From Fimbriosthenelais zetlandica (taxonomy: Eukaryota): DNA of 64,000 nucleotides. Location: the NCBI GenBank assembly GCA_977030845.1, contig OZ365110.1, forward strand, positions 45,198,001-45,262,000. The letters are read 5' to 3'. Below, piece by piece: positions 7,205 through 57,560 of this stretch (within the stretch, counting starts at the first letter, position 1; each line of letters opens with the position of its first letter). The notes under the pieces were generated by a model. That model was not told the origin of the DNA. It was given only the letters and a program-made list of their open reading frames with translations, and did not search any database. The translations under genes and the position numbers were made by a program.

Positions 7205-7988
7205 TTATGACCGGAGGTCCAGCACTTCCTGCATGAGTGGCTGTATACCCTCCGGGTTCACCTTGAGGAGGACTTGTGAGTGTTCCTCATTCAGGTTACG
7301 AATGTCCGTCAGTTTCATGAGGAGTTTGGGGTACATGTTCCGGGCAACATGGTTAGGGTACCTGGTCTCAAGATAACGCTTGAGAAGCATGGAGTAGCGC
7401 TCCTGCTCCTGCCACACCAGGTCCTTGTTGAAGAGGTTGGGCCGGTCTGGCGAAAAGAGCGACACAATGAGCAGTAGGATGAGTGTGGGCTGGTCTGCTT
7501 CAAGATCGACCGCCAGAGATTTGACAAAGTTCATGTGGTCCTCAAAGAGGCCGCCCTCGGCGTTTCTCAGCTGCTCCATGCTCATGGCACTCGTCTCCTC
7601 TTGGTCCCCGCCCTCCAGGAAATGCTGCTTCTCTTTGTCAAAGGTGATCACCGAGCGGAGGATGAGCAGCTCGATGGAGCCACCCTTTAGTAAGGAGATC
7701 TGGTCGGCTTGTGGCAGCGCTTTGAAGGATTTCACTTTCTTGGCCATGTCGATGACTCGTCGCACGGAGATCTCGGCGATGTTCACAAGGTCGCCCATGT
7801 TACAGGCGTTGGAACGGGGCAGTTCCTTCTCCATGCTGATCTCCAGGGACTGCTGATAGGCCATCTTCAGTTCATCGATGAGTTCTATTTCCTCGTATGT
7901 GAGCTCGGTTTGTGGGGAACCAGCGGTGTCTGGAACTGTGGGAACTGTGGACGACGATGAGGAATGGTCCATCTGCTCCGGCTGGACC
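7205..7988 (-). CDS. HR96: HR96/NR1J-like nuclear receptor, last coding exon (ligand-binding domain + stop)
   Basis: The 255-aa ORF has LBD signatures ISVRRVIDMAKKVKSFKALPQADQISLLKGGSIELLILRS (helices 3-5) and a C-terminal AF2 PLMQEVLDL. The acceptor TTTAATTTCTCCAG|G at 7989/7988 needs a phase-2 upstream exon, which matches the 8343 donor. Stop TAA is at 7205-7207. Confidence 0.95.
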
Positions 7989-11400: not shown

Positions 11401-12643
11401 AGCCAAAGCAAAGGTTTCACTCTTGTTTTTTCACTTGTTCTACGATTAAAAGGACTCGAGTACAGAACCTGAAACTTTCCAGACCATATTTCAGGGGGTA
11501 ATTGGGAGTTGTTAGTATAAAAAAGGAATTACTGGCTAATCATTAAGTTGACCCAATGATTCAGGTGATTAAAGCCAGGCTCTTAGACAACTTCTCTACA
11601 GAGAGGAGGCATTCATGGGAGCGTCCCTTCATTCTTTGAGGCGCAGAATGCCAGCAATATTCACCTCTTGTAATTTCTCCCTCAGCTTGCTCCCCGGAGC
11701 AGTCGCCGCCATTGATCGGGCGCGGTTGAGGAGGAAACCTGGCATTGCAAGATCGTTTATGGGCAAAGAGATAAATAGGCAAAGCTCCCAGTCAGTGGGT
11801 ACATATCCATCCCACCCCGAGGGACACTTCTCACTAAATATAGCTAAGCCGTGCCGATCATATTCAAGGCATCATAATCACAGTCGTGATGCCTCTCCAG
11901 ACGACACGGGCGTTATCACCATGGAAACGCTGCGCGGGAACGTTTGAGGGAAGCAGACGACATCGAGCAGTATCAGTGGAAAGGAGGGAATCCATTATTC
12001 ATACAGACGCACCGAATCCTTTGAAATTTGATGAGAGAATAAAACCTCATACAGATCAAAGCAGACGACATTTTTCAGCGCCTCTGCTGCCGCGCCGATC
12101 CTCCCCTCCTTCTACTCCTCCCTATTCTCTTCGCCGAGGGAAATGTATTTGTTTTCAGCAAGTGACTAACTTGCACAAAGGTTATCGTTACCTGGGCAAA
12201 ACCAATGTATGGACAATATCATGAGTGTCTCAGGTTCCCCAAGCATGTTCTTGAGGGAAGGGGGCGGGGGGGAGGGGGGCTCAGGGGCTGATTTACAACA
12301 CTTCAGTTCAGTCTAGAACGATTCCAGAGTATAACATTAAGCTATTATTAAAACATTGAGCTATTAGAATCTTACTTTCAGCCAAATAGGTTCTTTCATC
12401 AGAACAACTTCACCCTTATTCCAAAGAGTCACATTTAGAACTTAATACAATAAGCTAGTCATACTTTTATAATTTCCTCTAGTGCTACTTTGGAAAGATC
12501 GGATAAAGAACGCATGATAAAAATTAATATTGTTACCACTTCCGTCAAATTTTCCCATGAAAGCATAGTACTTTTCCACGAGGAATACTTACGGAGAATA
12601 ACTACGGGTGAGGGGTGGCTGTGATTGCGGCTGTGGTTGAAGG

Positions 12644-23634: not shown

Positions 23635-23801
23635 CTGTTTTCTTCTATTTTCTGTCTTTTCCTAGCCTTTTCTTCTTCTGTCAGGATGTATTCTTTTCGC
23701 ATGCCTATCTCAAAGCATTTTCGCAATCGACACCGTTTGCAAAATCTGCGATTTGATATGTCCATCTTGCACTTCTCGTCATAGGGGCACTTGAAATAAT
23801 C
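23635..23801 (-). CDS. HR96: HR96/NR1J-like nuclear receptor, second zinc-finger exon (167 nt)
   Basis: Acceptor TTTTCTTCCCCAG|GAT and donor AG|GTAAGT. It encodes DYFKCPYDEKCKMDISNRRFCKRCRLRKCFEIGMRKEYILTEEEKARKRQKIEEN, the second C4 finger plus C-terminal extension, closely resembling Drosophila HR96 as I recall it. Confidence 0.95.
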
Positions 23802-25705: not shown

Positions 25706-28112
25706 ATATATATTAGGCCTAGATGTGACACCAGGAAAAAACTAATAAAGTAGCAATGGCAAAATACTCATGAAGGCACCTTTTCCAGCTTATCAGCAGG
25801 ACCATATTTTAGCCGACTAAACCATCCATTGTTTTCACCAAAGAATACAATAATCAGATAACATCTTCAAACATCCCCACTAACGAGAAATACTGCTGCC
25901 TATCTTTCCTCTTCTTAATGTTGGAGACAAGCCCTAGCGGAAAGGGCGCAAGTTGCAACCCACTCAATATCCATCCCTACCTGATGTAATGGGGAGATGA
26001 GGGGCATAAATCGTGGGCAGGGGACCAGTAAAGCACCTCCAAAGACAGGTACTGGTACCGCGGCTATCTGATCCAGGCCTTTTTTGCCCAGTCTTTCCTT
26101 GCCACATCTGTGTTTTATGTGGCAAGGTAATTAAGTCGTTTGAATTATCGATGGTAACGTGCTGTAATTATGCTGCAGCGTTCACAAGCCATCGCCATGA
26201 TCCAAATGAAAGCATGATCATACATGATTCTATATAAGATTATCCCAATGGAATGGGCAAAACTACATGGAGTAATATACCATTGCAGGAACTGACATAC
26301 CAAAGATAATTATGGTATTTAATTCATTTGGAAGTTCCCCTAAATCTATAGAAGGATACCTCAGATACAAAAACCTTCTCTAAACCAGAGGTTTTATAAT
26401 GTGCCTCAATGTACTTCAGTGAACCTATTCAGTACGTCATTCTAACAGTATACCTCCAACAGGTTTCTCCACAAACGCTGCTTTAAATACAACCATCAAC
26501 TAATGAAGATGGAATTGATGAACAATTATACTTTGTAATACACATCTCTAATTAGGAGTGAAAGTATCATAAATACTAGTTCCCATTTTTTTTTTTGTAT
26601 CTACACAGAAACATGTGTCTTTAGTTGAAATGCTGGTCAGCGGGGAGTTTATGTTAGTCTTGAAGAAGCAGTAGAGGAGGGTCTATATTTAACCAAGTAC
26701 AAATTTATGAAGACAGTTGTGTGGGTTAAAAGTCGGGAGGGAAGGGAAGATTGGTCCTGTTTTGATGTTAATGAAGGCTGAGGTTGAATGACCTACTGAG
26801 AGTACAGAAAGGACATTGAGGGTATAATCTTTTACCTTCCTGAAACTCGCAGATAACAACCCACCAACTACAAAATCCATATTAGTTTAGAACCACTAAA
26901 TATCATTTGGCTTCATGTCCAATTATTAGGTGAAAGAATCCAAACTATGAATTAGCTTCCAAGTATTCACGCAGAAACCAGATGTTGCCTACGGCTTCGA
27001 CATATTGCAACATATGAATATTACATAATAATTGCGATATGAATCAAAATAATTTCACGCTCTGTTCCTGAGATGAATGCCAGTAATTTAGAGGGAGGAA
27101 GCCATGGCAATAGCTCTGGTATATCAGCCAAGCGTGCAATATCTACACAGGGCAGAGTTCACTGCTCGAGCCTTAATGAGAGACGCGGGCAAATGCACAC
27201 ATGAAAAGCGTCATCAAAGCATGAGAGGGTGTGACAAAGTAAGTAAATATTGTCAATCATTATTCATTCTCGCCAAACGCATTGTGACAGGGGAGGTGTA
27301 GGGGAGATGAGGCGAGTCGAGCTTCAACAAATTGATATACACCTTATTGTATGTAGTTAAAATGGCAAGAGCAAGATATCTTGCTCTAAGTTTAACTTAA
27401 TAAGGATCTAGAAAAGTCTACGATAATAGTTCCATGGTCTTGTTAATTAAGTAGAGTGATGTCAATAGGAAACAACAAAAAAACTGAAGCAAAGCAACAG
27501 GAATCAGTTACTAGCGTTCTGAAAATCCCCCAGGGAGCATTTTTATACAGAGATTCTAAGCCCTTCCTCGTGGATGGATGTGAATAATTGAATGCCAACT
27601 TCTTGTCAGACAGGTAATGATTGATGCTTTTAGTTGACGCAGCTGATAAATCGCTCACTGACTTGTAACCTGCTAACCTGCAAGACATCCTCAATCTGTC
27701 TAATGATTACTGATATTAGAAACCAGGAATGAAATGCTTACATCAACGAGCTCTGTCCATTATAAAAAGAGATTACCATAAATCTATCCTCCCTTTATTA
27801 ATCTCCAGTTATGTTTTGTTGATTGAGTTGCTAATTGACGGTATTTATTATGAGTTATACATTAGGCAGATTAAACACTGGCTGGCTGCAATTAAGATAA
27901 CGTAAGGACAAAGTTCATGTCTATAGGCTTACTGCAGAAAATTAAGAAATGGGAATAAAAGGACGTGGAGATTGTCCCTGGACTGAAAATAGAAGACAGG
28001 TGCATTCCCATAAAGACCTGAAGAGATTTCTTAAATAAAGAACAACCCTAGATCATCAATTTATGATGTCGGTAGCACTTAAATGACCTCTCCCCCACAC
28101 CATTCTACTCAC

Positions 28113-28411
28113 CAAGCCTTTTGGTGCATTCCGTCGGAAGAACGCTTTGCAGGATTCACAAGAAATGGCATCGAAGTTGTATCCAAGTGCTCGGTCACCA
28201 CACACCCCACATATTTTGTCCTCTTTGTTTTTCCTCGCTCGTCCTGGTCCTTGTGTCGGGGAGGGGACACCTCCAGGTCCCATGGAGCCTGGAGGCATGC
28301 CTCCCGAGGCCCCGAGGCCTTCCAGGTAGGGCCCGTCCACCTCGACCTTGATGTCCATGTCAAGGTGATGAGGCGGCAGGTAACGCCCCACAGGCTCGCC
28401 TATATGTATCC
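28113..28411 (-). CDS. HR96: HR96/NR1J-like nuclear receptor, A/B region + first zinc-finger exon (299 nt)
   Basis: Acceptor TCTTTATCTTTTCAG|GG and donor TTG|GTGAGT. It encodes [33 protein letters not shown], whose ESCKA P-box is diagnostic of the NR1J group. The exon starts in phase 1, so an upstream exon exists (or translation starts at the internal MDIKVEV). Confidence 0.95.
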
Positions 28412-31400
28412 CTGAAAAGATAAAGAGAGAGACTTCCGTTAAGACATGATCTGACGACAGGAAACAAGTGACAGGGCTATATAACAGGGGGGTGTCCATC
28501 AATGTCTGTGATGTTCTCTCAAGAAAATGCAAAGACAGTTAAGCATTCATACATTCAACCGTAGCATCATTTCATATCAGATTGTCGTGAATAAGTTTCT
28601 GTCTTGAATATATACCCCACTGGCCTATACTGGACAAGATTACCTTGTGTGCATCAGGTATTTTTGAGTGTTCTATGACAAGGAAATATCGCAATAGGTG
28701 TTAAAACAAAATACTGTGCTCTCTTGGTTTCACTCTTATTGAAAGGTATTATTAGCTGGAACTCGCTCATACTGGCGCCAGGACCAACTGCACATTTGGA
28801 ATGGAATGCCAGGGCCAGAAGGTCAAAAACAGGGTTTAGGGAGATAGTTACTCAATCATAATCTCCCTGTAATAACACAACCTCCCCCTGTCATCATCAC
28901 AAATCTAAAGCAATATATGAACATTTTTCATTTTTTCCGGCTCAAAATTAGAGCTTTTAAGCAGCCCTCCGAGAGCATGCACTGCAAGGGGGACACAAGA
29001 GGGCGTTGTTCTCGTCATGTGACCATCATGTGATCACGATCCATGATGGACGTAATCAGCCTAGCTTTAGTTGGGAGCATGTTAAGCATGTTAAACATGC
29101 TATTTCTCTTTATTACACCTGCGGTCTTGTGCCATGCATCGCTGAATGCCTCTCACACACGCGTTACCTGGGCTCCCGCAGCTTTAGGTAGGGGGCGAAA
29201 AGGTCATGGATTTCAACGTCAGAAATACTTTAATTATTAACACCTTACTATAGGCGATCACGTATTCTGTAAAAGGCCTAGACAGTAAGAGCCCCAGATT
29301 AACTAGTACAACTAGCCCTATAGTATACAGCTTCCAAATAAGTCTATCTAATGTGTATCATATATCCAAGGGATCTGAGATCCTGCAGATACTTTTTATG
29401 TATTTTCTGCATATATATTTCTCGTCGACGCTACAGATTAAATGAAATTAATTAAATTCAAATATACCGTAAAAATAACATTTTGATAGAGGATGGATCA
29501 ATGGCAGAATATATATTCAACCTAGAAGGATCGATCCTTCCCACGAAACCGTGACAAAATCCATTTACTTCCGTAATTAGGATAAACTCAATAAACGGAT
29601 AACATTAACAAAAATACAAAGCCAATCCACGATTAAAGATACTTATTTGCGTAAAAAACCTTTAAGAGGTTTTTGTCTCTCCAACACTTCAGGTAACCGT
29701 AGAACAATACAAAAGCACGGTTCATGCACACGACCCATTAGCCGTGCTCTAGAAGTGAGAGAAAATTAAAAGATTGAAACCAATTGTACTTCTCAACTCG
29801 TGATGTATTCCCTCCAGACATGCTAGTCCATGAGGCATACGCAATGCATGACATCCAATCCTGTAATTTTCATGTCTGGACAAGCTACCATAAACAACCA
29901 TCTGCATAGAAACGGGTCGGGATTTCAACCAGGCCCCAGTTAGAAGGGTCATAAAGAATTCATGGCTATAAAGGAGGCTGGACAGGTATAGGTGAGGTTT
30001 TTAGAAGCCTGTTAATTCAATTCCAACTATACCGTTACTATTCCATTGGTCCATTTTTTGAGGTAATGAATAATGCTAACCACCACTTCCAAGTTTACCA
30101 GATTCAACTGAAGTATATATTTCTTTCCCAGACCGGCTAGAGAAATATTTACAGATATATTTAAAAATGGTTGAGTAACGTTTTGGAACATGAAAATTGA
30201 TCAAAACAATATTACTATAAAATAAATCAAAAGTAATTTCATGAACTTGGCCCAAGCACAAAGTTCTGTTGTAATTATATATATGTTCAATCTGTTCTGG
30301 AGACGAATAAGATAATGAATTTATCACCGCCTCTCACTTTAACAAGTCTATAGTCTGATAATTCTCAGTCATTAATCACAATTATTGAAGACAAATGCAG
30401 AGCACCACCCGTGACAGGTTATCATAATGTGAAGCGGCGGAGCGTGCATAATCAAGATCCAAGTATATATCCTCTTCCTCAACTCGCTTCTTAAAAGAAA
30501 CAATCAAACTGCTAAGGAGGCGGGCTACACTGGTTATGGACAAATAACAATCAATCGAAAAAATCGACTTTTGGTAATGTTTTCAGGCGAAACCCTAGAT
30601 TAACGATGTAGGCTATATCTCCTTTAAAAATTAACTCATTGTCAAGATTAATGACATTTTGATAACGTTATATTTATTATGATTAGTAGCTAATCATTGA
30701 AGACATTTCTATTGAATCTTTGTGAGCATCAGTTGGTAATGGGAAAAGTTAGATCAAGTGAGGAAGTTTTAAGTGTGTTATTGGACAATCAAACATGGTT
30801 GGCGCTGATTTATTACAGGGTCGTGGTGTCACGCCATTATCTTGGAGGCCCTTTTGTCAGGTAGCGGAGGTTCTCCACACCCCGCCCTCCTCGAGCCAGT
30901 CAAAAGCCTTTAGAAGCTCTTTTTCTGGCTAAGTCAAAAGGTAATACTGTATGGTCCTTTTGTAAGTGAGACTTTAAAGGGCACGGCAGGGTTCTTCTAC
31001 CTCTGGCTATCCTACACATAAAAGGTTAAAAAAAAGATGGAGAAGAATTGCCTAAAACATGGTGACATGGATATGATTGGTGGGGCCTCCTCCGCCTGGG
31101 GGCTCGAACGCCAGCTGACGTGCAAGTGGAGGCATGCAGACTGACCTATGGCCTAATTTCAATGTCGACCTGAAGGAGGCGGACGGGGAAAAGTCAGGTG
31201 GGAGAGTCTATAGGATATGGCTTTGTGTTAATTAAGGGGCTGTCAGAAGTTCATGAATGGAGGGGAAGTGGTTAAAACTAATTTAAGCCGAAGGAGTGTG
31301 TTATTTTAGACTTCCCTATTTATTCTGAATTCTTCTGTATTTCTAAGGTAGTATGGACGAAGTGATGGACTGATATAAAAAAATAACGGTTACATCCTTA

Positions 31401-45671: not shown

Positions 45672-48600
45672 CAACCACTTATCGATCCGAGTACACAACA
45701 GTGGTAGGACATCATAGGAAAGGAATGCAGAAGGTTCATAAAATTTTATATCTCATTCTTTATGACTAGAGGGAACACTCGACCAAGTGTTCTTTCTCTA
45801 GCAGCAGTTATCAGATGTTAAAATAGTGGAATTGAAATCAAGCCCACCTCAGCCAAGAACAGAGATAGATGTCCACCATTAGATTTATATTGTACTTTGT
45901 TTATGTGTGCTGGAGTGCTATCATCAATGTACCCCATAAATTTCTGAAATAATATACGATTAATATGATTGTGCCTCCTCAAATGACCAAGTCAATCGAT
46001 CAATAGACGAGCAATATCGCAGACAATTCTTAAATAGTTATCTAAGAAGAGATGATAACGATTTCCATAAACCGAAAGTAGGCTTAACGAATCCATATCA
46101 CAATTGTCATTGTTGTGCCCCCTCTATAGCCAATCAATACATGCGAATAAAATATTGACTAGTAATGCTTTCACAATCAGTAAGCACGTTGGCTAAGTTG
46201 AACACGTACAGTTATATGGGGGTCCAAGTTGCAGGTCTATTGTTGGTACTTTCTGATAAGATGTCCCATTTAAAACGACCTTACCATGTACCACACACAT
46301 GTATGCAATCTGATTCAGGCGCCACAACACAATATTTGCCAAATCCTGGTACTCTGATCATTACCATGTACACATACAAATTATGTATCTAAAAAGCTCT
46401 TCGAAACAAACGTTATTAACGTATTCATAGTATTGACCTTCTTTGCATAAAATCTGGGCGAATGTACGTGAACTGTTCAACTGTTACATGTACATTGTAA
46501 TATACATTACACCTTCGGTTTTAATATAAGAATTGACAAGACACGTGATGCTAATCTGGCTGTTCTAAAAAAAAGTGAAGCACTTAACATAGGTCGATTC
46601 AAGGTGTACAGTACATTAGTTTCATTAGTTCTTTGGCACAGGACACAATAGCAACCAGGAATAATCCTTAACTAATTCCTAAAGCAAATATTGGATGGCT
46701 CAGCCATTTATACAGGAGCCACAGGGGTGTCAAGGTGCGAGGCAGACATATATTAGGTGAACCTGTAAGATAAACGTTCAAGAAACAAAGATGCTGAAAA
46801 GAGGACAAAATAATAATGTGATTCTAAACAGAGAATAATAAATATTATATACTATTCATTTTACTTTCCTGGTTATTATGAATTTATATGGCATGAATCT
46901 GGTCCATTTCTATATAAGTTATGGTTTTGGAAAGAATGATTGATGAGCCATGATAAAAATAACAATATGCCTAGTAAAAATTTAATTTTAATGAATCTAA
47001 TGCAGCTTATGGAACCAACCTCTACTTCCTGCATTTTGAATTGGTCCGCGGAACATATCCCTCCCAATCTTCATTCCAAATGGCATGAATCTGTTGTTTA
47101 GAGAGGCATGGGTGTATCTATATACATGTAAACCCCTTAAGAGTAGAATCCTCGCCCCGGGGGCTTTTCCAGCGTCTCTAACAATGACCAGCCACAACAA
47201 CAATAATAAAGCCCAATCCTCTCCTCTCGCTCACTCAATGGCCGGATTGGGGTCGTGCATCACATGTAATCCTCTTTTGAAACCTTTAAGTGAACATGCT
47301 GGGTTCTGGCGAGGTAGTTGAGCGATAATTGGCAGTTTCAGCTTTAAGTGCTCATTACGTCTGAATGTGTATTGAAAATCCGGGTGTGTGTAAAGGGGCC
47401 CAGACGATAGGTCACTTGGCGGTTTTGGTGGCAAAAGGAAAGCAATCAACCACTAAAGGAAGACAACAAAGTGACCAATAGTTGCTTGTGGGTGTTTATT
47501 GTTGTCCTGTGTTGCTGTAGGGTTGTATAGGGATGGATTAGGATATGTAATATGGGTGGATTTGTATGGCGGTGACGGTTAGTCAGTGGGAGGAAAAATA
47601 GACGGAATCAGCAGCGCGTACTTGAGTACACAGAGGTTATGTCCGCGCCATCCAGAGAACACTCCAACAACCAGGTCCTTCCTGGCTTCACTCTAATATA
47701 CCATCCCCCACCCTGGAGGAGAGAGGCATGTGGGTCAATGGCTTCCTAACCTCTCCACACTGGTCTATTATTCCTTACAGATGTGTGTATTGTGAACTAG
47801 TCCGTGTACTCAACACTCTTTCTTGTTGCTACAGCCTTCTCCTACTCATTAACTCCAGTGCTCGTAGATCACCTGGAGGGGGAGGGTTCAGCGTTCCTCC
47901 AGCGTTCAATGGGCGCCAAAGCAGTCAGTGAAGCCAGCGTTGCCTGGTTAAAACCCTGGTGTCTGGGTGACAGTTAAAGCTGTCTTATGAAGCTGTCAGA
48001 GGACTGTCAGACCGTTGACAGCACCCACTGTCACCTCTGGTGTCTGGCCAGCGTTCTCCCGGCGTTAGCTACCGCCAATACAAGTCTCCTGAGTTGGGGG
48101 GAGAGGAGTATAACACGAGGCTATGCGGCCTCGAGTCCCAAACCCAGCCACCAGAGAATCTATGTCAGACGGGGAACCTTCCTCTGTTATAGGTCTAATA
48201 CCACAGGTCTGCTGCTTTGTTCGCCATACATACACCTACCCCTCCTCCTGCGTCTCCCCATTAAGCTAGATCCTGTCTTAATGGGTAGATGACCCAGTCA
48301 AGTGACCAATGGTCTCCTGGAGGAGTTCACAGTCATGCACTTCCTCCAGACAGCTGAAGAACTGGTTTTGTTGTAAAAGGGTTGGCGAGGGCAGGCAGCA
48401 GCACTAGCACTCCTCCACCTCCTCTTCTAATAGTATTCTCGTACTATGGAGCCGCCGAGCGGTTTGCACTCGCTGTTTGAGGCTGATTCTGTAGCCAGGA
48501 GAGGAGAGAGAAGGGAGAGAGCTTATTGAATGTTGTCCCTAGCGCGGCGATGGTGAGGTGGCCCTATGCCGCTTAGTACAGTGCACGCACTTAGGTGCAT

Positions 48601-51600
48601 TGGCCTGGTGTTGGTGGAGATGGTGGTTCTGTATGTGTGAGTGTGTGGGTGACCAGGGGCACTCCAAATAAAATGGATTGTCATGCCGTTTAGGATCCCC
48701 CCCAAATTCGTTTTTTTCTGAGAAAGGGGAGGGGTGGAGGGAGAAAGTATCTTCATAATATCTAGATACAATTTCTGATGGAACTGGTAACCCATTTTCA
48801 TGAAAAAATATTTTATTGGAAAAAAATGGACTTCAACTCAAAATATGTACCTTTTCACTTGTACCGTAAAGTAAAATAGCTTGTACGAAGAATGGTACCT
48901 CTTTTCTTGGCAAACATGCCTGTTTTGAAATTTCATTTCAAAGGAGTTACTAAATTCACCCCTCTTTGATATATTTTGTTATACACAGTGGGAAGCGAGA
49001 CTAACGACTTTAAAGCATCCCATTATCTTTAAAATTGGGAACGCAATGCAACCCACTTTGGTTCCCAGTGCCCCAGGGTGGGAGGGTGGGTGAGTGATGG
49101 AGCTGTATGTGTGTGTGTTGTCCAAGTGTGTCTGTGTGTTGGAAAACTTGCACACACCGCCCTATATAACGATCACACACAGTGAGTTCTGTGTTTGGTA
49201 TACTGAGGTCGTATAGTTCCAATTCGAGATAAATCTTGGAAATAACAGGGATGGAATGGTGGAGTGGTGTGGAGGAGGTACTAAGGGGTGGGAGATGTTG
49301 AAGGCCCTGTATATAGAAAGCTTTGGGACGGTGGTATTATAGAAGCCTCTCAGCTAGGGGCAGGTTTGCTTCGCAGCTCTATACCGGCGGATGACCTCGA
49401 TTCACCAACCGTAATTAATAGGTCTCCTTCTCATAACAGAGGCTTAGCCAATGGGATACCACTCCTTCCGTGCTAGCTAAACACCATGCCAATCCATACA
49501 CGAAATTAATGTGGACAGAGAACCCATAAACACGTAATACCTAGCTTCAATATTACTCATGCATGAAATGATAAAAATCCAAAGTATGCATGTCAAGACA
49601 GGAGAAAATAAAGTGGTTGTAACATAGATTTTATCAGCAATTTACCTCAGGAATATTTCACTAATTTGAAACTTTTTTCTGAAGAAAGTTTTTACTCCAT
49701 ATTTCCAATTTGAACAGGTATGTAACAATAGATGGTCTTTACATTGTAGTTGAAAGTACAATATAACCACGCCATATTACAAATCAACAATATCTCACAC
49801 ACAGAAGCTAATGCCACATTAAAACATGCAAGAATGGCTTCATACTTTTCAGTGAGTCAACCCATTCAGGTATGAGATCCGCACATGCTTGTTTCATTCG
49901 TTCACGGAAGACTGAACAAGCAATAATAAGCAAACTTCGGGAGAGCTAAATAGTTATTGGAAGACCGAATATGCCATATTTTCACCCTACAGAATTATAT
50001 CATTAATGGTGAAAACGTAACAAATCGAGTCACAATGACGGGTTTTGGTCATGGCTTAGTGGAGCTCAGATTAACACTGCCGGCTACTTAAGTAGCTATT
50101 GGGTGTCAATTCCATGTACATCACAATGAGGGACAGAGAAACAAAATCATAGACAATCAACCGAGCAATCTGAAGACATTCCCTGAGAAAGAGATTATCG
50201 GCTCAGTCATTGTACAAGGCGGGTTCCTTGAAAGCCAATTCTTCAGGATAAATAGCCCATGTCATGGTTTCAGGCCCCTTTTCCCCATTTTCCCTTGAAG
50301 CCATTTTGACCAATTACATCATAGCTTCTCATCCACGGCATTAGCAGTCCTGAATGGCGCAAACCCGATTACACCCTGTGTCACTTAACGTTTAGAATAG
50401 AGCTCTTTTTTGCTCCAAACTGTGAGCCTTTGTTATGCTGCACTAAAGGCAGGTTGACATAGAGTATTGCTCATTCACTCTCCAGCCCAGAGCCTCTATC
50501 CCGCCAGCTCTCGCTGCACGTGACCTGAACCGAACTCGGCCTGAGGTCACATGACCAGTGTCCTCACGTAACATTGCGGCAGTACAGGGTATTACAACCA
50601 GTTACAACGGTGAGGTATTTACCAGATTCCACTCTGGGGAAAAGAGCGTGACTCTGATCTTGTAATACAACGCGAATTACGAGTTTATTAGCACATATTG
50701 CGTAAAAGCCAAACCGCCAGACTGTTTTGTTGTCTGATGGTTTGTCTGGCGCATTATGGTATGCCATGTTTTGACGGGTGTCAGCTATAACCATGCAGCA
50801 CAGACACAAATTTTAATCTACTCCATGTGCCGAGCACTCGAATGTAAATTAGCCATGATCAGGAGTAGAAAGTTCAAACTTCGCCAACACTAGGTTATCC
50901 TGGGTTTTTAAATGTTTCTTTTTCTTTGGTTCAGAATACCAAAGTAGAACACAATGTTTTGGAGGACATGCATGGTGCAATCCTGTATACAATCACTTCC
51001 GCATTGGACATTTTTTGTGTGAATCGTATATATGTACATTCATCATGACATGTTAAATTTTTACGACATGACTTTGGCACATTAAATATTAATCTTTCTA
51101 TCAATACAGATTTATCTGATAAAGTGTATATATGACCTTGAGCGGTCATATGCGGGCATATCACAATGGTTTACACATTTTTCAAATAATGCTCTAGCGT
51201 CTTTGTTTAAAAAGTGCCAATCAATGAATAGTGCATGTAAGCCTATATAATAATAGAAATGTATAAAAGTGTATTTCATACACTTAGTTTTTGTTTGAAA
51301 TATGGACAAAGATCACCAGCCACATGACCCAAAAGGAAGTAAACCTTATAGTCACATCATAACTAGGCTACAGGCCTACATGTGGCCATGTATACAGTAT
51401 CCATGTACCTAGGTCAACCCTCTATTCTGGCTATATATGATACTGTTGTCCTCTATAGAGCTAGCTGTCCAAATCTCTATACACAAAATGGTCATGTGAA
51501 CAGCGGGGGCAGTGAAAGTGTTTGGTGTGGGTGAAGGTGAAGTGTGTAGGCGAGAGATCGATGGTTATGTGGAGGGGTTGGGGGATGAAGCCAGCCTAGT

Positions 51601-51835: not shown

Positions 51836-51875
51836 CACTCACCTGAAAAATAAGAGACATCATTTTAACAACAAA
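51836..51875 (-). other. recursive-splice-site-like motif (3'ss fused to 5'ss): GTCTCTTATTTTTCAG|GTGAGTG
   Basis: Pyrimidine tract + CAG immediately followed by a consensus GTGAGT. The junction is at 51843/51842, with about 35 nt upstream free of AG. Confidence 0.5.
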
Positions 51876-52065
51876 ACTTAAATGCAAGTAAATGACGTAT
51901 GAAGACAAAACATGCAGCTTATTAAGGGATCTTATTATATTTGAGTTGGTTAGGACTTAATTATTTGAACTGTCACATTTGTGAATATCCTGCAATTTAA
52001 GGAAATTGATGGCAATTGTTGACAGTTTCTATAAGGGATATAATAACCTATATTATTGAAAATAT

Positions 52066-52081: not shown

Positions 52082-54689
52082 CCTCAGTCACCAAAGGTTA
52101 GGTTTACTTGAAACCCAGGTCAAAGGGGTAGAGGGGTCTGTGGGAGGTTCTATGGACGGGATGGGTATTGCCTGGGGTGTGTATTCAGATGTGAGGGTGT
52201 CTGACAGGATGGGGAGGTGAGGTGGCAATGTTCAGGGTCAGCGATTGGTCAGAGACGCCAAAAAGATGTAGGTCTACTCTATACCGGAGAAGTGTCCCTT
52301 TCATATAATATTATTAATTAGTCTATGCTTAAATCATTTTACTCTAAGGTCTATGCTTAAAAGTCATCCATACTTTTATTTCAGATTTCGCAAGGGCCAT
52401 CACTTTTATCTTCTATTACCTCACATGGTATAAAACAGTGTCATGCAATACTGGTTAAAAGAACTCTTTAAAGGCTTGGAAAGTAAGTATCACTTTCAAG
52501 AGTCCCACATCATAGTCCTGTTCCTCACTACAGACTTCCAATGATCATCTCGTGGTGTCCAGTAGCACGTGACCCAGTCCGCAAATAGACGAGAGGTCAA
52601 TATCAGAGTTCAAGGTCAAAGGTTTCGACATCATCCTGCCCTGTTACTGTCTGGTATCTGGGCGGGGGAGAGGGGTGAGGGCATTTTGGGTAGCGGATAA
52701 AATCAAATCTAGAGGCATTTCGAGGAAAGTATCGTAATGTTCAAGAGGCATTATTTGTATAGGGGAGAGACTAGTCTGCAGTGTATGTTAAAATGGACAA
52801 TGATGATAATATGAAGAAGTGAGGGAAAGTTGGGGGCGATTACTCCACAAATAACAATATAGAGAATTTCTATTAGAGCTTAGGTCTACATTTTACTCTA
52901 AGATGAGAGTTAACAAGGTAATATAGGTAATGGAGCATATTAAGCATAAAATATGACTTTATTTGTGAGGGGGTGGGGGTGTTGTTGGCTAACTGGAGGA
53001 ATGTGTGTATTTCAGCCGCGTTCCACATTTGGAATGGGAGCCTCTAGGAGTCGCTCGGAGGTCAGTGGATGAGGCCCGGAACGAGGCTATAAAAGTCACA
53101 TCAAACGTGCATAACGAGCGGACAGCGGTATCTTCTACGGCCCGCTGATCCCCCCACCCCTCATACATCTAGACTGGCCACCTAGACTAGCTACAGTCAC
53201 TCTCATTTAAACACATTCCATCCCTATATACATAGCAAAAAAAAACAATATCCTTGAATAAAGTTACGTCAGCAAATAACAAAGCCAATCACTATCCCTA
53301 ACACCAAAACAGCGCACTATTAAAGAGGTCTTATTTGTGATTGAAAGACATCGATAGCCTATAGACAAAATATAATACAAGTCGGGCAAACTATTAGAAA
53401 AGACCCGTGCAAGTGTAAGTTCAATGTCAAGGGGGGAACTATCCTTTGCATGAAGTAAAGGCTCCTTATTTCTGGTTCGACTGTTTTACATCGTTTGTGC
53501 GGTAGGCAAGTGGACCTCTATTCTGTAGACATATCAATAGAAACAACCAGAATATTCTGGTTCAAATTTATACCCCAGCTCGAGTGACTCATCCCCAGTT
53601 AAACTAAATATCATGGAGGAATGACTCCATGAATGATAAGAACGTAAACGGGGTCATTTTGAAAAATAATAATGGGCATAACTGAAACACAGTGTCTATG
53701 TGCATGGCGGTGGGATTGGAATTATGAGATAAAGGTTTGAAACATTTTCATTTTTTGGACAAAAACGTTTTTTCACAATGTTTTATATACTTGTACATAT
53801 ACCATATTGTGAATGCCAAAACCTAATGGAAACGTTGCGGATTGAAACAAAAACATAGCCATTGGCATGCATGCCTCGCAACGTGTCTCAACCCTGGGTC
53901 GTTCCTGGCATATCTGCACTGACTACAGATAGGGCTAAGTAGGAAGGATCTTCCTTGATATCTACAATAAGAGACATTAAATCAGAGCACATGCCAGAGT
54001 CTGGTCGAGATAAGCTATCTGATAAGGCTGACTATGAGCCTCTTCGTTCAGAAAAATTAACTTAAAACAAATATGCCTTCTCCAGTTAAATTCTTCAGTA
54101 CATGATGCACAGGTGCAAAGTGACCAAAATGTTTATTACATTTGGCCCTCAACCATGCAGTCAACTATGCAAGACAGGACATAATTATGTCATCTTAAGA
54201 TGACCAGACCACCGACCAGCTTGACCATTTATCCTCGACTATAATGCCAGAGTCCCGGTTTGACCAGTGGCGTGAAATGACTGACCTCGCCTTAAACAGA
54301 CTGTGTCCATGATCAGTCACTGGCTCACTGTACTACATTTAGATGCAGGTTATTATAACTTCTCCACCTTCTAGGGAATATCAAGATCAATTCCAATTTC
54401 AAAATCTTGAACGGGAATATGAAGGAGATACAAGAGAATGTTCTAGTCACAAATATGAAACCAAAAGGAAGATTGCCCAACCCAAAAGGAAGAGGGCAAT
54501 CCTTTTGCTGAACAGAACCAAATGAAATAGGGTCTAGATCGAAGTACCAAAGTTCCAATTGTGTTGAATGTTTTTGTACAACATGGATTGAAGAGCTGTG
54601 ATTAGCCGAATACCAAATCTATATCCCAGACCATGGAGCTAAATATAGTAAGAGCATCACAAAAAGCTGACGGAGCCAATAATCAACCT

Positions 54690-57478: not shown

Positions 57479-57560
57479 CACTCACCTGAAAATATATAAA
57501 GGAATATGCATAAGAACATGAATTTCAAGGACATAAAATCATTCAAGTCAGTAAATAAAA
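57479..57560 (-). other. recursive-splice-site-like motif: TTCCTTTATATATTTTCAG|GTGAGTG
   Basis: The junction is at 57486/57485. About 80 nt upstream are AG-free and contain a branch-point-like TACTGAC. Confidence 0.55.

What the first reader, a model, noticed from the sequence alone, without database searches (positions are those of the whole stretch)
51836..51875. Recursive splice site (ratchet point) candidate A
Seen on the gene's sense strand: ...ATGTCTCTTATTTTTCAG|GTGAGTGATGG, a textbook 3' splice site fused to a textbook 5' splice site, about 23.4 kb upstream of the first recognised exon. Known: AG|GT ratchet points subdivide very long introns in Drosophila, and RS-exons do so in vertebrates. 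To my knowledge they are little documented in other invertebrates. Inference: the receptor's long 5' intron is removed stepwise.
Basis: partly seen in the sequence, partly recalled or inferred. Interest (0 to 1): 0.7.

Follow-up and report, generated by a model that had tools for sequence, protein, structure and literature searches.

The report
Candidate recursive splice site, HR96 upstream

Summary
The motif is real: on the minus strand, TCTCTTATTTTTCAG|GTGAGTGATGG, with the AG ending at 51843 and the GT at 51842.

**Not chance.** One match where 0.04 are expected per window. A second site (B, 57486) has the same 14-nt core on the same strand, and its flanks are unrelated to A's. Genome-wide, a consensus donor follows Y5CAG|GT 1.7 times more often than R5CAG|GT.

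**The geometry given is wrong.** The HR96 protein starts in an overlooked coding exon (1b, ATG 47086 to 47020), conserved with a synonymous-change pattern in a related species. The 18.6-kb intron before the DNA-binding exon therefore does not contain site A. A lies 4.76 kb upstream of exon 1b and is intronic only if a more distal, unfound exon exists.

**Related species.** No ratchet motif stands at A's aligned place, although six other blocks in the region are conserved. Yet its syntenic region also holds exactly two such sites, both on the sense strand and both upstream of exon 1b. One carries the identical 14-nt core.

**RNA.** No RNA run was listed.

**Verdict.** A plausible (about 50%) but unproven recursive splice site. 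It is a new member of a known kind. This scan had already flagged 17 similar candidates on other DNA of this genome.

The parts
51836..51875 (-). Site A: polypyrimidine tract, then CAG fused to GTGAGT. The AG ends at 51843 and the GT is at 51842-51841.
   Evidence: and 65 (donor score 12.9, the only donor scoring 10 or more on the sense strand between 53132 and 46900).
57479..57492 (-). Site B: the same 14-nt core TTTTCAGGTGAGTG, AG ending at 57486, an 81-nt AG-free zone and a CTTAT branch-like motif at -26. It lies 5.64 kb upstream of A.
   Evidence: Flanks are not homologous to A's.
47020..47086 (-). Previously unrecognised coding exon 1b of HR96 (MPFGMKIGRDMFRGPIQNAGSR plus 1 nt), followed by the donor G|GTTGGT at 47019. 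It joins exon 2 in frame.
   Evidence: 22 codons compared with the relative, 9 with third-position synonymous changes only and 4 conservative replacements. Conservation stops at the ATG-3 position and at the donor.
28113..28411 (-). Exon 2: N-terminal segment plus the first zinc finger. The acceptor is ttttcag|GG at 28412/28411 and the donor TTG|GTGAGT at 28112.
   Evidence: (PF00105), and (17 codons before the internal Met: 10 synonymous changes, 1 replacement).
23635..23801 (-). Exon 3 (second zinc finger), donor CAG|GTAAGT.
   Evidence: 86% nucleotide identity to the relative.
7205..7981 (-). Ligand-binding-domain exon ending at the stop codon.
   Evidence: PF00104; HR96/NR1J orthologues.
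53060..53132 (-). Conserved non-coding block 1. It has a 23-nt identical core TTTGATGTGACTTTTATAGCCTC and lies 1.22 kb upstream of A.
50505..50579 (-). Conserved non-coding block with GGTCAtgTGACC and AGGTCA half-sites. It lies 1.26 kb downstream of A.
   Evidence: and 51 (35 of 40 identical).

Best explanation
Site A is most likely a working ratchet point: a 3' splice site fused to a 5' splice site. It would act on HR96 transcripts (or another sense-strand transcript) that start at a distal exon not yet identified, upstream of site B.

The proposed steps are all inferred:
- The distal exon's donor pairs first with B's AG at 57486.
- The junction recreates a donor (exon|GTGAGT), which pairs with A's AG at 51843.
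- The donor recreated at A then pairs with the acceptor of exon 1b or of exon 2 (28411).

What is shown: the motif itself, its non-random frequency and its sense-strand placement in two species. The transcript, the upstream exon and the splicing intermediates are inferred.
For: - Motif quality: YYYYYCAGGTRAGT occurs once in the window against 0.04 expected. T stands at -5 and -6, as in 99.5% of fly ratchet points (10.1101/006163).
- Site B carries the identical 14-mer 5.6 kb upstream on the same strand. This is not a duplication and the site is not a repeat.
- Genome counts: the 14-mer occurs 30 times against 8 for the reversed control, and Y5CAGGTRAGT 714 times against 325.
- A consensus donor follows Y5CAGGT in 714 of 39,730 cases (1.80%) but follows R5CAGGT in 395 of 37,521 (1.05%, at least 52 of them satellite copies). 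Acceptor-like and donor-like halves are therefore coupled, which ordinary donors would not produce. About 300-390 sites are in excess.
- Synteny: in 74 kb of the relative's syntenic DNA the sense strand holds exactly two high-grade fused sites and the antisense strand none. Both lie upstream of exon 1b. One (L015:4404, ctaac...gtctttttcag|GTGAGTG) has the same 14-mer core. At this genome's density for the 14-mer (30 in 894 Mb of strand), finding it in 74 kb has a chance of about 0.002.
- This genome shows the same picture: two sense sites upstream of exon 1b and none in the 47 kb downstream.
- No Pfam-bearing ORF lies in the 70 kb upstream, which is compatible with a large intronic or regulatory domain.
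Against: - No RNA evidence of any kind; no RNA run was listed.
- No exon upstream of A or B was found in this genome out to extended coordinate 134,000, or in the relative out to 46 kb upstream of exon 1b.
- The nearest downstream exon (1b) lacks a conserved acceptor and has TATATA at -38/-40 in both species. It may have its own promoter, which would put A in flanking DNA.
- At A's aligned place the relative has no AGGT, although six other blocks in the same 25 kb are conserved.
- The only weak match (L006:1570-1593) reads TTTTTCAG|AGGAGTG, with no GT.
- Fly ratchet points are strongly conserved.
- The segments would be short (5.6 and 4.8 kb) compared with the fly mean of about 18 kb.
- A's branch-point candidates are weak.
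Confidence: 0.5

Rival explanations
1. Site A is an ordinary splice site of an unannotated non-coding 5' exon or cassette exon. Either its GTGAGT is the donor ending an alternative first or leader exon, or its AG starts a real included exon (an RS-exon type arrangement) that ends at a downstream donor.
For: - Nuclear-receptor genes often have several 5' exons; Ostrea edulis HR96-like is annotated with isoforms up to X30.
- A is the only strong donor (score 12.9) between conserved block 1 and exon 1b, 1.22 kb downstream of block 1.
- The relative has a comparably strong donor (AAG|GTGAGT, L006:1820, score 12.2) 1.58 kb downstream of the same block. That donor is preceded 242 nt earlier by TTTTTCAG|, which weakly aligns to A. 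This looks like a normal exon in the relative.
- Possible downstream donors follow A, for example GGGA|GTAAGA about 138 nt away.
Against: - A plain donor does not need the T-rich tract plus CAG in front of it. Three of the four fused sites in the two species have full acceptor anatomy.
- Genome-wide, strong donors preceded by purine tracts show no excess (395 against 381 for the reversed control). Ordinary donors therefore contribute little to the excess of the pyrimidine-preceded form.
- The sequence upstream of A is about 30% G+C and intron-like.
- No sequence conservation exists between the putative exons.
Confidence: 0.2
2. The motif is a chance occurrence without function, in DNA upstream of the exon-1b promoter that is not transcribed on this strand.
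For: - About 45-58% of genome-wide Y5CAGGTRAGT hits are at background level.
- The site is not conserved at the aligned place, whereas neighbouring blocks are.
- No upstream exon was found.
- The scan read the whole genome, so some chance pairs are expected to be flagged. The 14-mer was defined after seeing A and B.
Against: - Two identical 14-mers on one strand within 5.6 kb: among 30 genome copies about 0.006 such pairs are expected (calculated).
- The relative's syntenic region also carries two sense-strand fused sites and no antisense ones, including the same 14-mer.
- All four sites face the gene's direction and lie upstream of exon 1b.
Confidence: 0.2
3. The fused sites belong to a separate sense-strand transcript, for example a long non-coding RNA upstream of HR96, and not to the receptor's own pre-mRNA.
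For: - Exon 1b may have its own TATA-type promoter.
- No link between the sites and HR96 exons is shown.
Against: - No evidence for such a transcript.
- No Rfam match in 46-60 kb.
- No Pfam-bearing ORF upstream.
Confidence: 0.1

Closest known systems
Drosophila zero-nucleotide-exon ratchet points (Ubx, kuz, osp, luna; Duff et al., preprint 10.1101/006163; Pai et al., PMC6110457; PMC8605326)
   Same: - An acceptor fused to a donor (Yn-CAG|GTRAGT).
- T at -5 and -6.
- Sense-strand placement.
- More than one site per locus.
- Genome-wide excess of the fused motif.
   Different: - The fly donor half is mostly GTAAGT; here it is GTGAGT.
- Fly sites sit in proven introns of 11-133 kb with segments averaging about 18 kb, and their flanks are strongly conserved.
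- Here the intron is unproven, the segments would be about 5 kb, and the site is not kept at the aligned place in a relative.
- There is no RNA evidence.
Vertebrate RS-exons and fly cryptic RS-exons (recursive splicing by exon definition; reviewed in PMC5126111; PMC6110456)
   Same: - An AG|GT junction that can be followed by a downstream donor.
- The relative has TTTTTCAG|, then 242 nt, then AAG|GTGAGT at roughly the corresponding distance from a conserved block.
   Different: - No conserved downstream donor or RS-exon was shown for A.
- Inclusion or skipping cannot be assessed without RNA.
Ordinary 5' splice sites of alternative first exons in nuclear-receptor genes
   Same: - A strong CAG|GTGAGT donor upstream of the first coding exons.
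- The receptor family is known for many 5' isoforms.
   Different: An ordinary donor needs no pyrimidine tract plus AG directly in front of it. The genome-wide coupling of the two halves argues for a distinct class.

Membership tests
Zero-nucleotide recursive splice site (ratchet point) | Consensus 3' splice site (pyrimidine tract, YAG) fused without a gap to a consensus 5' splice site (GTRAGT) | tested here: met
   tctcttatttttcag|GTGAGT, 13 of 19 pyrimidines, donor score 12.9.
Zero-nucleotide recursive splice site (ratchet point) | T at positions -5 and -6 (99.5% of fly ratchet points, 10.1101/006163) | tested here: met
   tttttcag. The fly rule was read.
Zero-nucleotide recursive splice site (ratchet point) | Lies inside a long intron, on the sense strand of the host transcript | tested here: inconclusive
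   The sense strand of HR96 is confirmed. However, the site is outside the 18.6-kb intron 47019-28412, and no exon upstream of it was found.
Zero-nucleotide recursive splice site (ratchet point) | Site and flanks conserved in related species | tested here: not met
   No AGGT stands at the aligned place in the relative, and the flanks are unalignable. The relative does hold two fused sites elsewhere in the syntenic region, one with the same 14-mer. The kind and number are therefore kept, but not the position.
Zero-nucleotide recursive splice site (ratchet point) | Splicing intermediates: upstream exon joined to the base after the AG, lariats to and from the site, saw-tooth read density | not testable with these tools
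   No RNA run was listed for either query, so read laying could not be used.
Zero-nucleotide recursive splice site (ratchet point) | The fused motif is over-represented in the genome relative to controls | tested here: met
   30 against 8; 714 against 325; 1.80% against 1.05% continuation to RAGT after Y5 and R5 tracts respectively.
HR96 / NR1J nuclear receptor (host gene) | C4 zinc-finger DNA-binding domain plus ligand-binding domain, with closest named relatives annotated HR96 | tested here: met
   (PF00105, PF00104). (Ridgeia 76%; Lingula, Patella and Ostrea 'HR96')..

The most novel reading that the evidence does not exclude
This lophotrochozoan (probably annelid) genome uses fly-style zero-nucleotide recursive splicing at several hundred sites. 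At the HR96 locus a two-ratchet layout upstream of exon 1b is kept between species, while the exact positions turn over and the TTTTCAG|GTGAGTG core is re-created. This would be ratchet-point turnover under a constraint on number rather than on place.
Probability: 0.3. Interest if true: 0.6.

Novelty: new member of a known kind. Interest (0 to 1): 0.35.

Why it matters
Recursive splicing is documented by RNA evidence in flies and vertebrates. A full-text search found no paper linking it to annelids or molluscs.

If RNA data confirmed sites such as A and B, they would show that ratchet points are a general bilaterian device. They would also show that ratchet points can occur in rather short segments of 5' regulatory introns, and that they can move between species.

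For this gene the practical result is a corrected model. The HR96 protein starts in a small exon 18.6 kb upstream of the DNA-binding exon, and conserved non-coding blocks, one of them with nuclear-receptor half-sites, lie around site A.

Tried and rejected
- **RNA evidence.** Two searches for RNA runs (6 kb around the site; the ligand-binding exon) listed none (searches failed because the service was busy). Read laying could not be used.
- **Repeat or duplication.** Rejected: the site is single-copy and the A and B flanks are unrelated.
- **Closer relative (Logan ERR14368248/9, L017/L018).** Its divergence would be ideal, with non-coding patches 70-86% identical. No handle to its site-A region was found: the block-1 ORF gave no candidate and the block-50.5k ORF gave only a spurious hit. 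A second relative's contig (P0121) had no DNA served.
- **Walk in the relative.** Eight steps (L003 to L019) reached 46 kb upstream of exon 1b. No conserved upstream exon was found by blastn or tblastx.
- **Other checks that gave nothing.** Pfam on ten long ORFs in the 70 kb upstream gave nothing. Rfam on 46-60 kb gave nothing. The CpG observed/expected profile showed no clear promoter island. The RNA fold around A had z = -0.1.
- **Conditional-independence null.** A null using the total CAGGTRAGT count was dropped, because that count is inflated by tandem satellites.
- **Weak anchors.** Those at 61.1 and 67.4 kb are too short to prove that B and L015:4404 are positional orthologues.

Full report
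**Observation.** The minus strand reads ...aaaatgatgtctcttatttttcag|gtgagtgatggttcc. The G of the AG is at 51843 and the GT at 51842-51841.
- The acceptor of the DNA-binding-domain exon is at 28412/28411.
- YYYYYCAGGTRAGT occurs once in the window on both strands, against 0.04 expected from shuffles.
- The 14-mer TTTTCAGGTGAGTG occurs twice, both on the minus strand, at 51836-51849 (A) and 57479-57492 (B). The expectation is 0.07 even when one mismatch is allowed.
- A has T at -5 and -6, 13 of 19 upstream pyrimidines and a 32-nt AG-free zone. B has 14 of 19 and an 81-nt zone.
- The region around A is single-copy in the 447-Mb genome.
- The flanks of A and B are unrelated outside the core, so they are not copies of one element.

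**Host gene.** Pfam finds a C4 zinc finger in the ORF at 28056-28532 and a ligand-binding domain at 7205-7972, both on the minus strand.
- The ligand-binding exon's best named relatives are annotated HR96 or NR1-type receptors of annelids, brachiopods and molluscs: Ridgeia 76%, Owenia, Capitella, Lingula, Patella, Ostrea.
- The organism is therefore a lophotrochozoan, probably an annelid.

**Corrected gene model.** I walked along a 2.58-Mb contig of a related species (ENA ERZ25767047, ctg38945) from its DNA-binding exon upstream.
- Introns do not align between the two species. Collinear short blocks do: window 37702-37638, 40135-40082, 47089-47014, 50579-50505, 53132-53060 and 53478-53426.
- The block at 47 kb is coding. 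From an ATG at 47086, 22 codons (MPFGMKIGRDMFRGPIQNAGSR) differ from the relative by nine third-position synonymous changes and four conservative replacements. Similarity starts 3 nt before the ATG and ends at a donor, G|GTTGGT here and G|GTGGGT in the relative.
- This exon ends in phase 1 and joins exon 2 in frame.
- The 17 codons between the exon-2 acceptor and its internal Met show ten synonymous changes and one replacement (protein view). Translation must therefore start upstream, in this exon 1b.
- Consequently the intron ending at 28412 begins at 47019. It is 18.6 kb long, includes the young LTR element at 42.7-45.7 kb, and does not contain site A. A lies 4.76 kb upstream of the exon-1b ATG.
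- Exon 1b has no positionally conserved acceptor. Both species carry TATATA 38-40 nt before the ATG, so it may be a first exon with its own promoter.
- A is then intronic only for transcripts from a more distal exon. I could not find such an exon:
  - no strong further fused sites or Pfam-bearing ORFs on the sense strand up to extended coordinate 134,000;
  - no conserved block beyond 53.5 kb other than two weak ones.

**Is the motif more than chance, genome-wide?**
- The 14-mer occurs 30 times, against 8 for its reversed control.
- Two close same-strand pairs exist among the 30. One is A/B. The other is at C10:27.05 Mb, which another agent of this scan had flagged independently. About 0.006 pairs within 6 kb are expected.
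- Y5CAGGTRAGT occurs 714 times against 325 for the reversed control. R5CAGGTRAGT occurs 395 times against 381, and at least 52 of those are satellite copies.
- Conditioning on the shared core, 714 of 39,730 Y5CAGGT sites (1.80%) continue with RAGT. Only 395 of 37,521 R5CAGGT sites (1.05%) do (z about 8.7 by my calculation).
- So an acceptor-like upstream half and a consensus donor downstream are coupled. Ordinary exon donors, which should not care about the upstream tract, leave no visible excess in the purine class.
- Roughly 300-390 fused sites are in excess. This gives a single Y5 hit a prior of about 0.4-0.55 of being selected.
- The list also shows a three-site same-strand array with about 20-kb spacing on C1.

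**Conservation.**
- Between the flanking blocks (window 53060 and 50579; relative L006:241 and 5074) the relative has no fused site.
- MAFFT places A opposite L006 about 3815, where there is no AGGT.
- The only local similarity, 19 of 24 identical with E = 2.2, is L006:1570-1593. It reads catttttcag|AGGAGTG, an acceptor without the GT.
- That match lies 1.34 kb downstream of block 1, while A lies 1.22 kb downstream of it. It is followed 242 nt later by a strong donor, AAG|GTGAGT. The relative may have an ordinary exon there, but the match is too weak to rely on.
- Fly ratchet points and their flanks are strongly conserved (10.1101/006163), so this result counts against A.

**Synteny.** Merging the 74 kb walked in the relative and scanning both strands with one filter gives exactly two high-grade fused sites on the sense strand and none on the antisense strand. 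Both lie upstream of exon 1b.
- L006:6757 reads cactaac...ccatag|GTAAGT, 2.6 kb upstream of the ATG.
- L015:4404 reads ctaac...gtctttttcag|GTGAGTG, 22.9 kb upstream, and carries the same 14-mer core as A and B.
- The flanks of L015:4404 do not align to B. Positional orthology therefore rests only on order relative to the blocks.
- This genome shows the same layout: two sense sites within 10.4 kb upstream of exon 1b, none downstream, and one antisense site 38 kb away.
- At this genome's density, the 14-mer alone has a chance of about 0.002 of appearing in 74 kb.
- I read this as evidence that sense-strand transcription and splicing run through the region upstream of exon 1b in both species. The number and kind of sites are kept but not their exact places.

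**RNA.** Two run searches listed no RNA run, so no reads could be laid. None was listed; that does not mean none exists.

**Weighing.**
- Chance is unlikely for the A/B pair and for the parallel pair in the relative. It is kept alive by three things: the missing conservation at the aligned place, the missing upstream exon, and the post-hoc definition of the 14-mer.
- A plain donor of a leader exon does not explain the full acceptor anatomy. The genome-wide coupling also disfavours it. The relative's possible 242-nt exon keeps it open.
- My odds are: recursive splice site about 0.5; ordinary splice site of an unannotated 5' or cassette exon about 0.2; chance about 0.2; sites of a separate sense transcript about 0.1.

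**Comparison and novelty.**
- The site works like a fly ratchet point in anatomy. Membership is incomplete: the intron context is inconclusive, positional conservation was tested and not met, and intermediates are untestable here.
- The mechanism is known. A full-text search found no paper tying recursive splicing to annelids or molluscs.
- This scan has already noted 17 such candidates on other DNA of this genome, some with better support. These are leads, not evidence.
- Site A is thus one more, rather weaker, predicted member of a known kind.
- The more solid by-products are the new coding exon 1b and the conserved blocks around A.

Noticed in passing
window 47020-47086 (-), donor at 47019: Unrecognised first coding exon of HR96 (MPFGMKIGRDMFRGPIQNAGSR), conserved with a synonymous-change pattern in a related species. 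TATATA lies 38-40 nt before the ATG in both species.
   Followed up: yes
window 50505-50579 (-): Conserved non-coding block (35 of 40 identical in the core) holding a GGTCAtgTGACC palindrome and a further AGGTCA half-site. It is possibly a nuclear-receptor response element near a nuclear-receptor gene.
   Followed up: partly
window 53060-53132 and 53426-53478 (-): Two conserved non-coding blocks. The first has a 23-nt identical core, TTTGATGTGACTTTTATAGCCTC, which reads CTATAAAAG on the + strand. It could be a promoter or enhancer; no conserved donor follows it.
   Followed up: partly
window 11987-12062 (-): A 77-nt block 91% identical to the relative, lying between the zinc-finger and ligand-binding exons. 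It is probably a small hinge exon.
   Followed up: no
L006:1579-1820 (relative): Possible 242-nt exon in the relative (TTTTTCAG| ... AAG|GTGAGT), 1.34 kb downstream of block 1. That is about where site A lies in this genome.
   Followed up: partly
G000:C1:52244153, 52264113, 52283853 (+): Three Y5CAGGTAAGT sites on one strand, spaced 19.96 and 19.74 kb apart. This looks like a ratchet array in a giant intron.
   Followed up: no
G000:C10:45282854 (+), extended coordinate 84854: Fused site ccatctgtttcag|GTAAGT on the opposite strand, 33 kb upstream of A. It may belong to a + strand transcript.
   Followed up: no
G000:C1:1.21-1.35 Mb and C5:29.1-30.8 kb: Tandem arrays that carry CAGGTGAGT: 56-nt units recurring about every 17 kb, and a 42-46-nt AAAGGCAGGTGAGT satellite. 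They inflate genome counts of donor-like words.
   Followed up: no
window 51836-51895 (-): The sequence cgtcatttacttg upstream of A can pair with caggtgagtgatg across the junction. The fold is no better than that of shuffled sequence (z = -0.1).
   Followed up: yes
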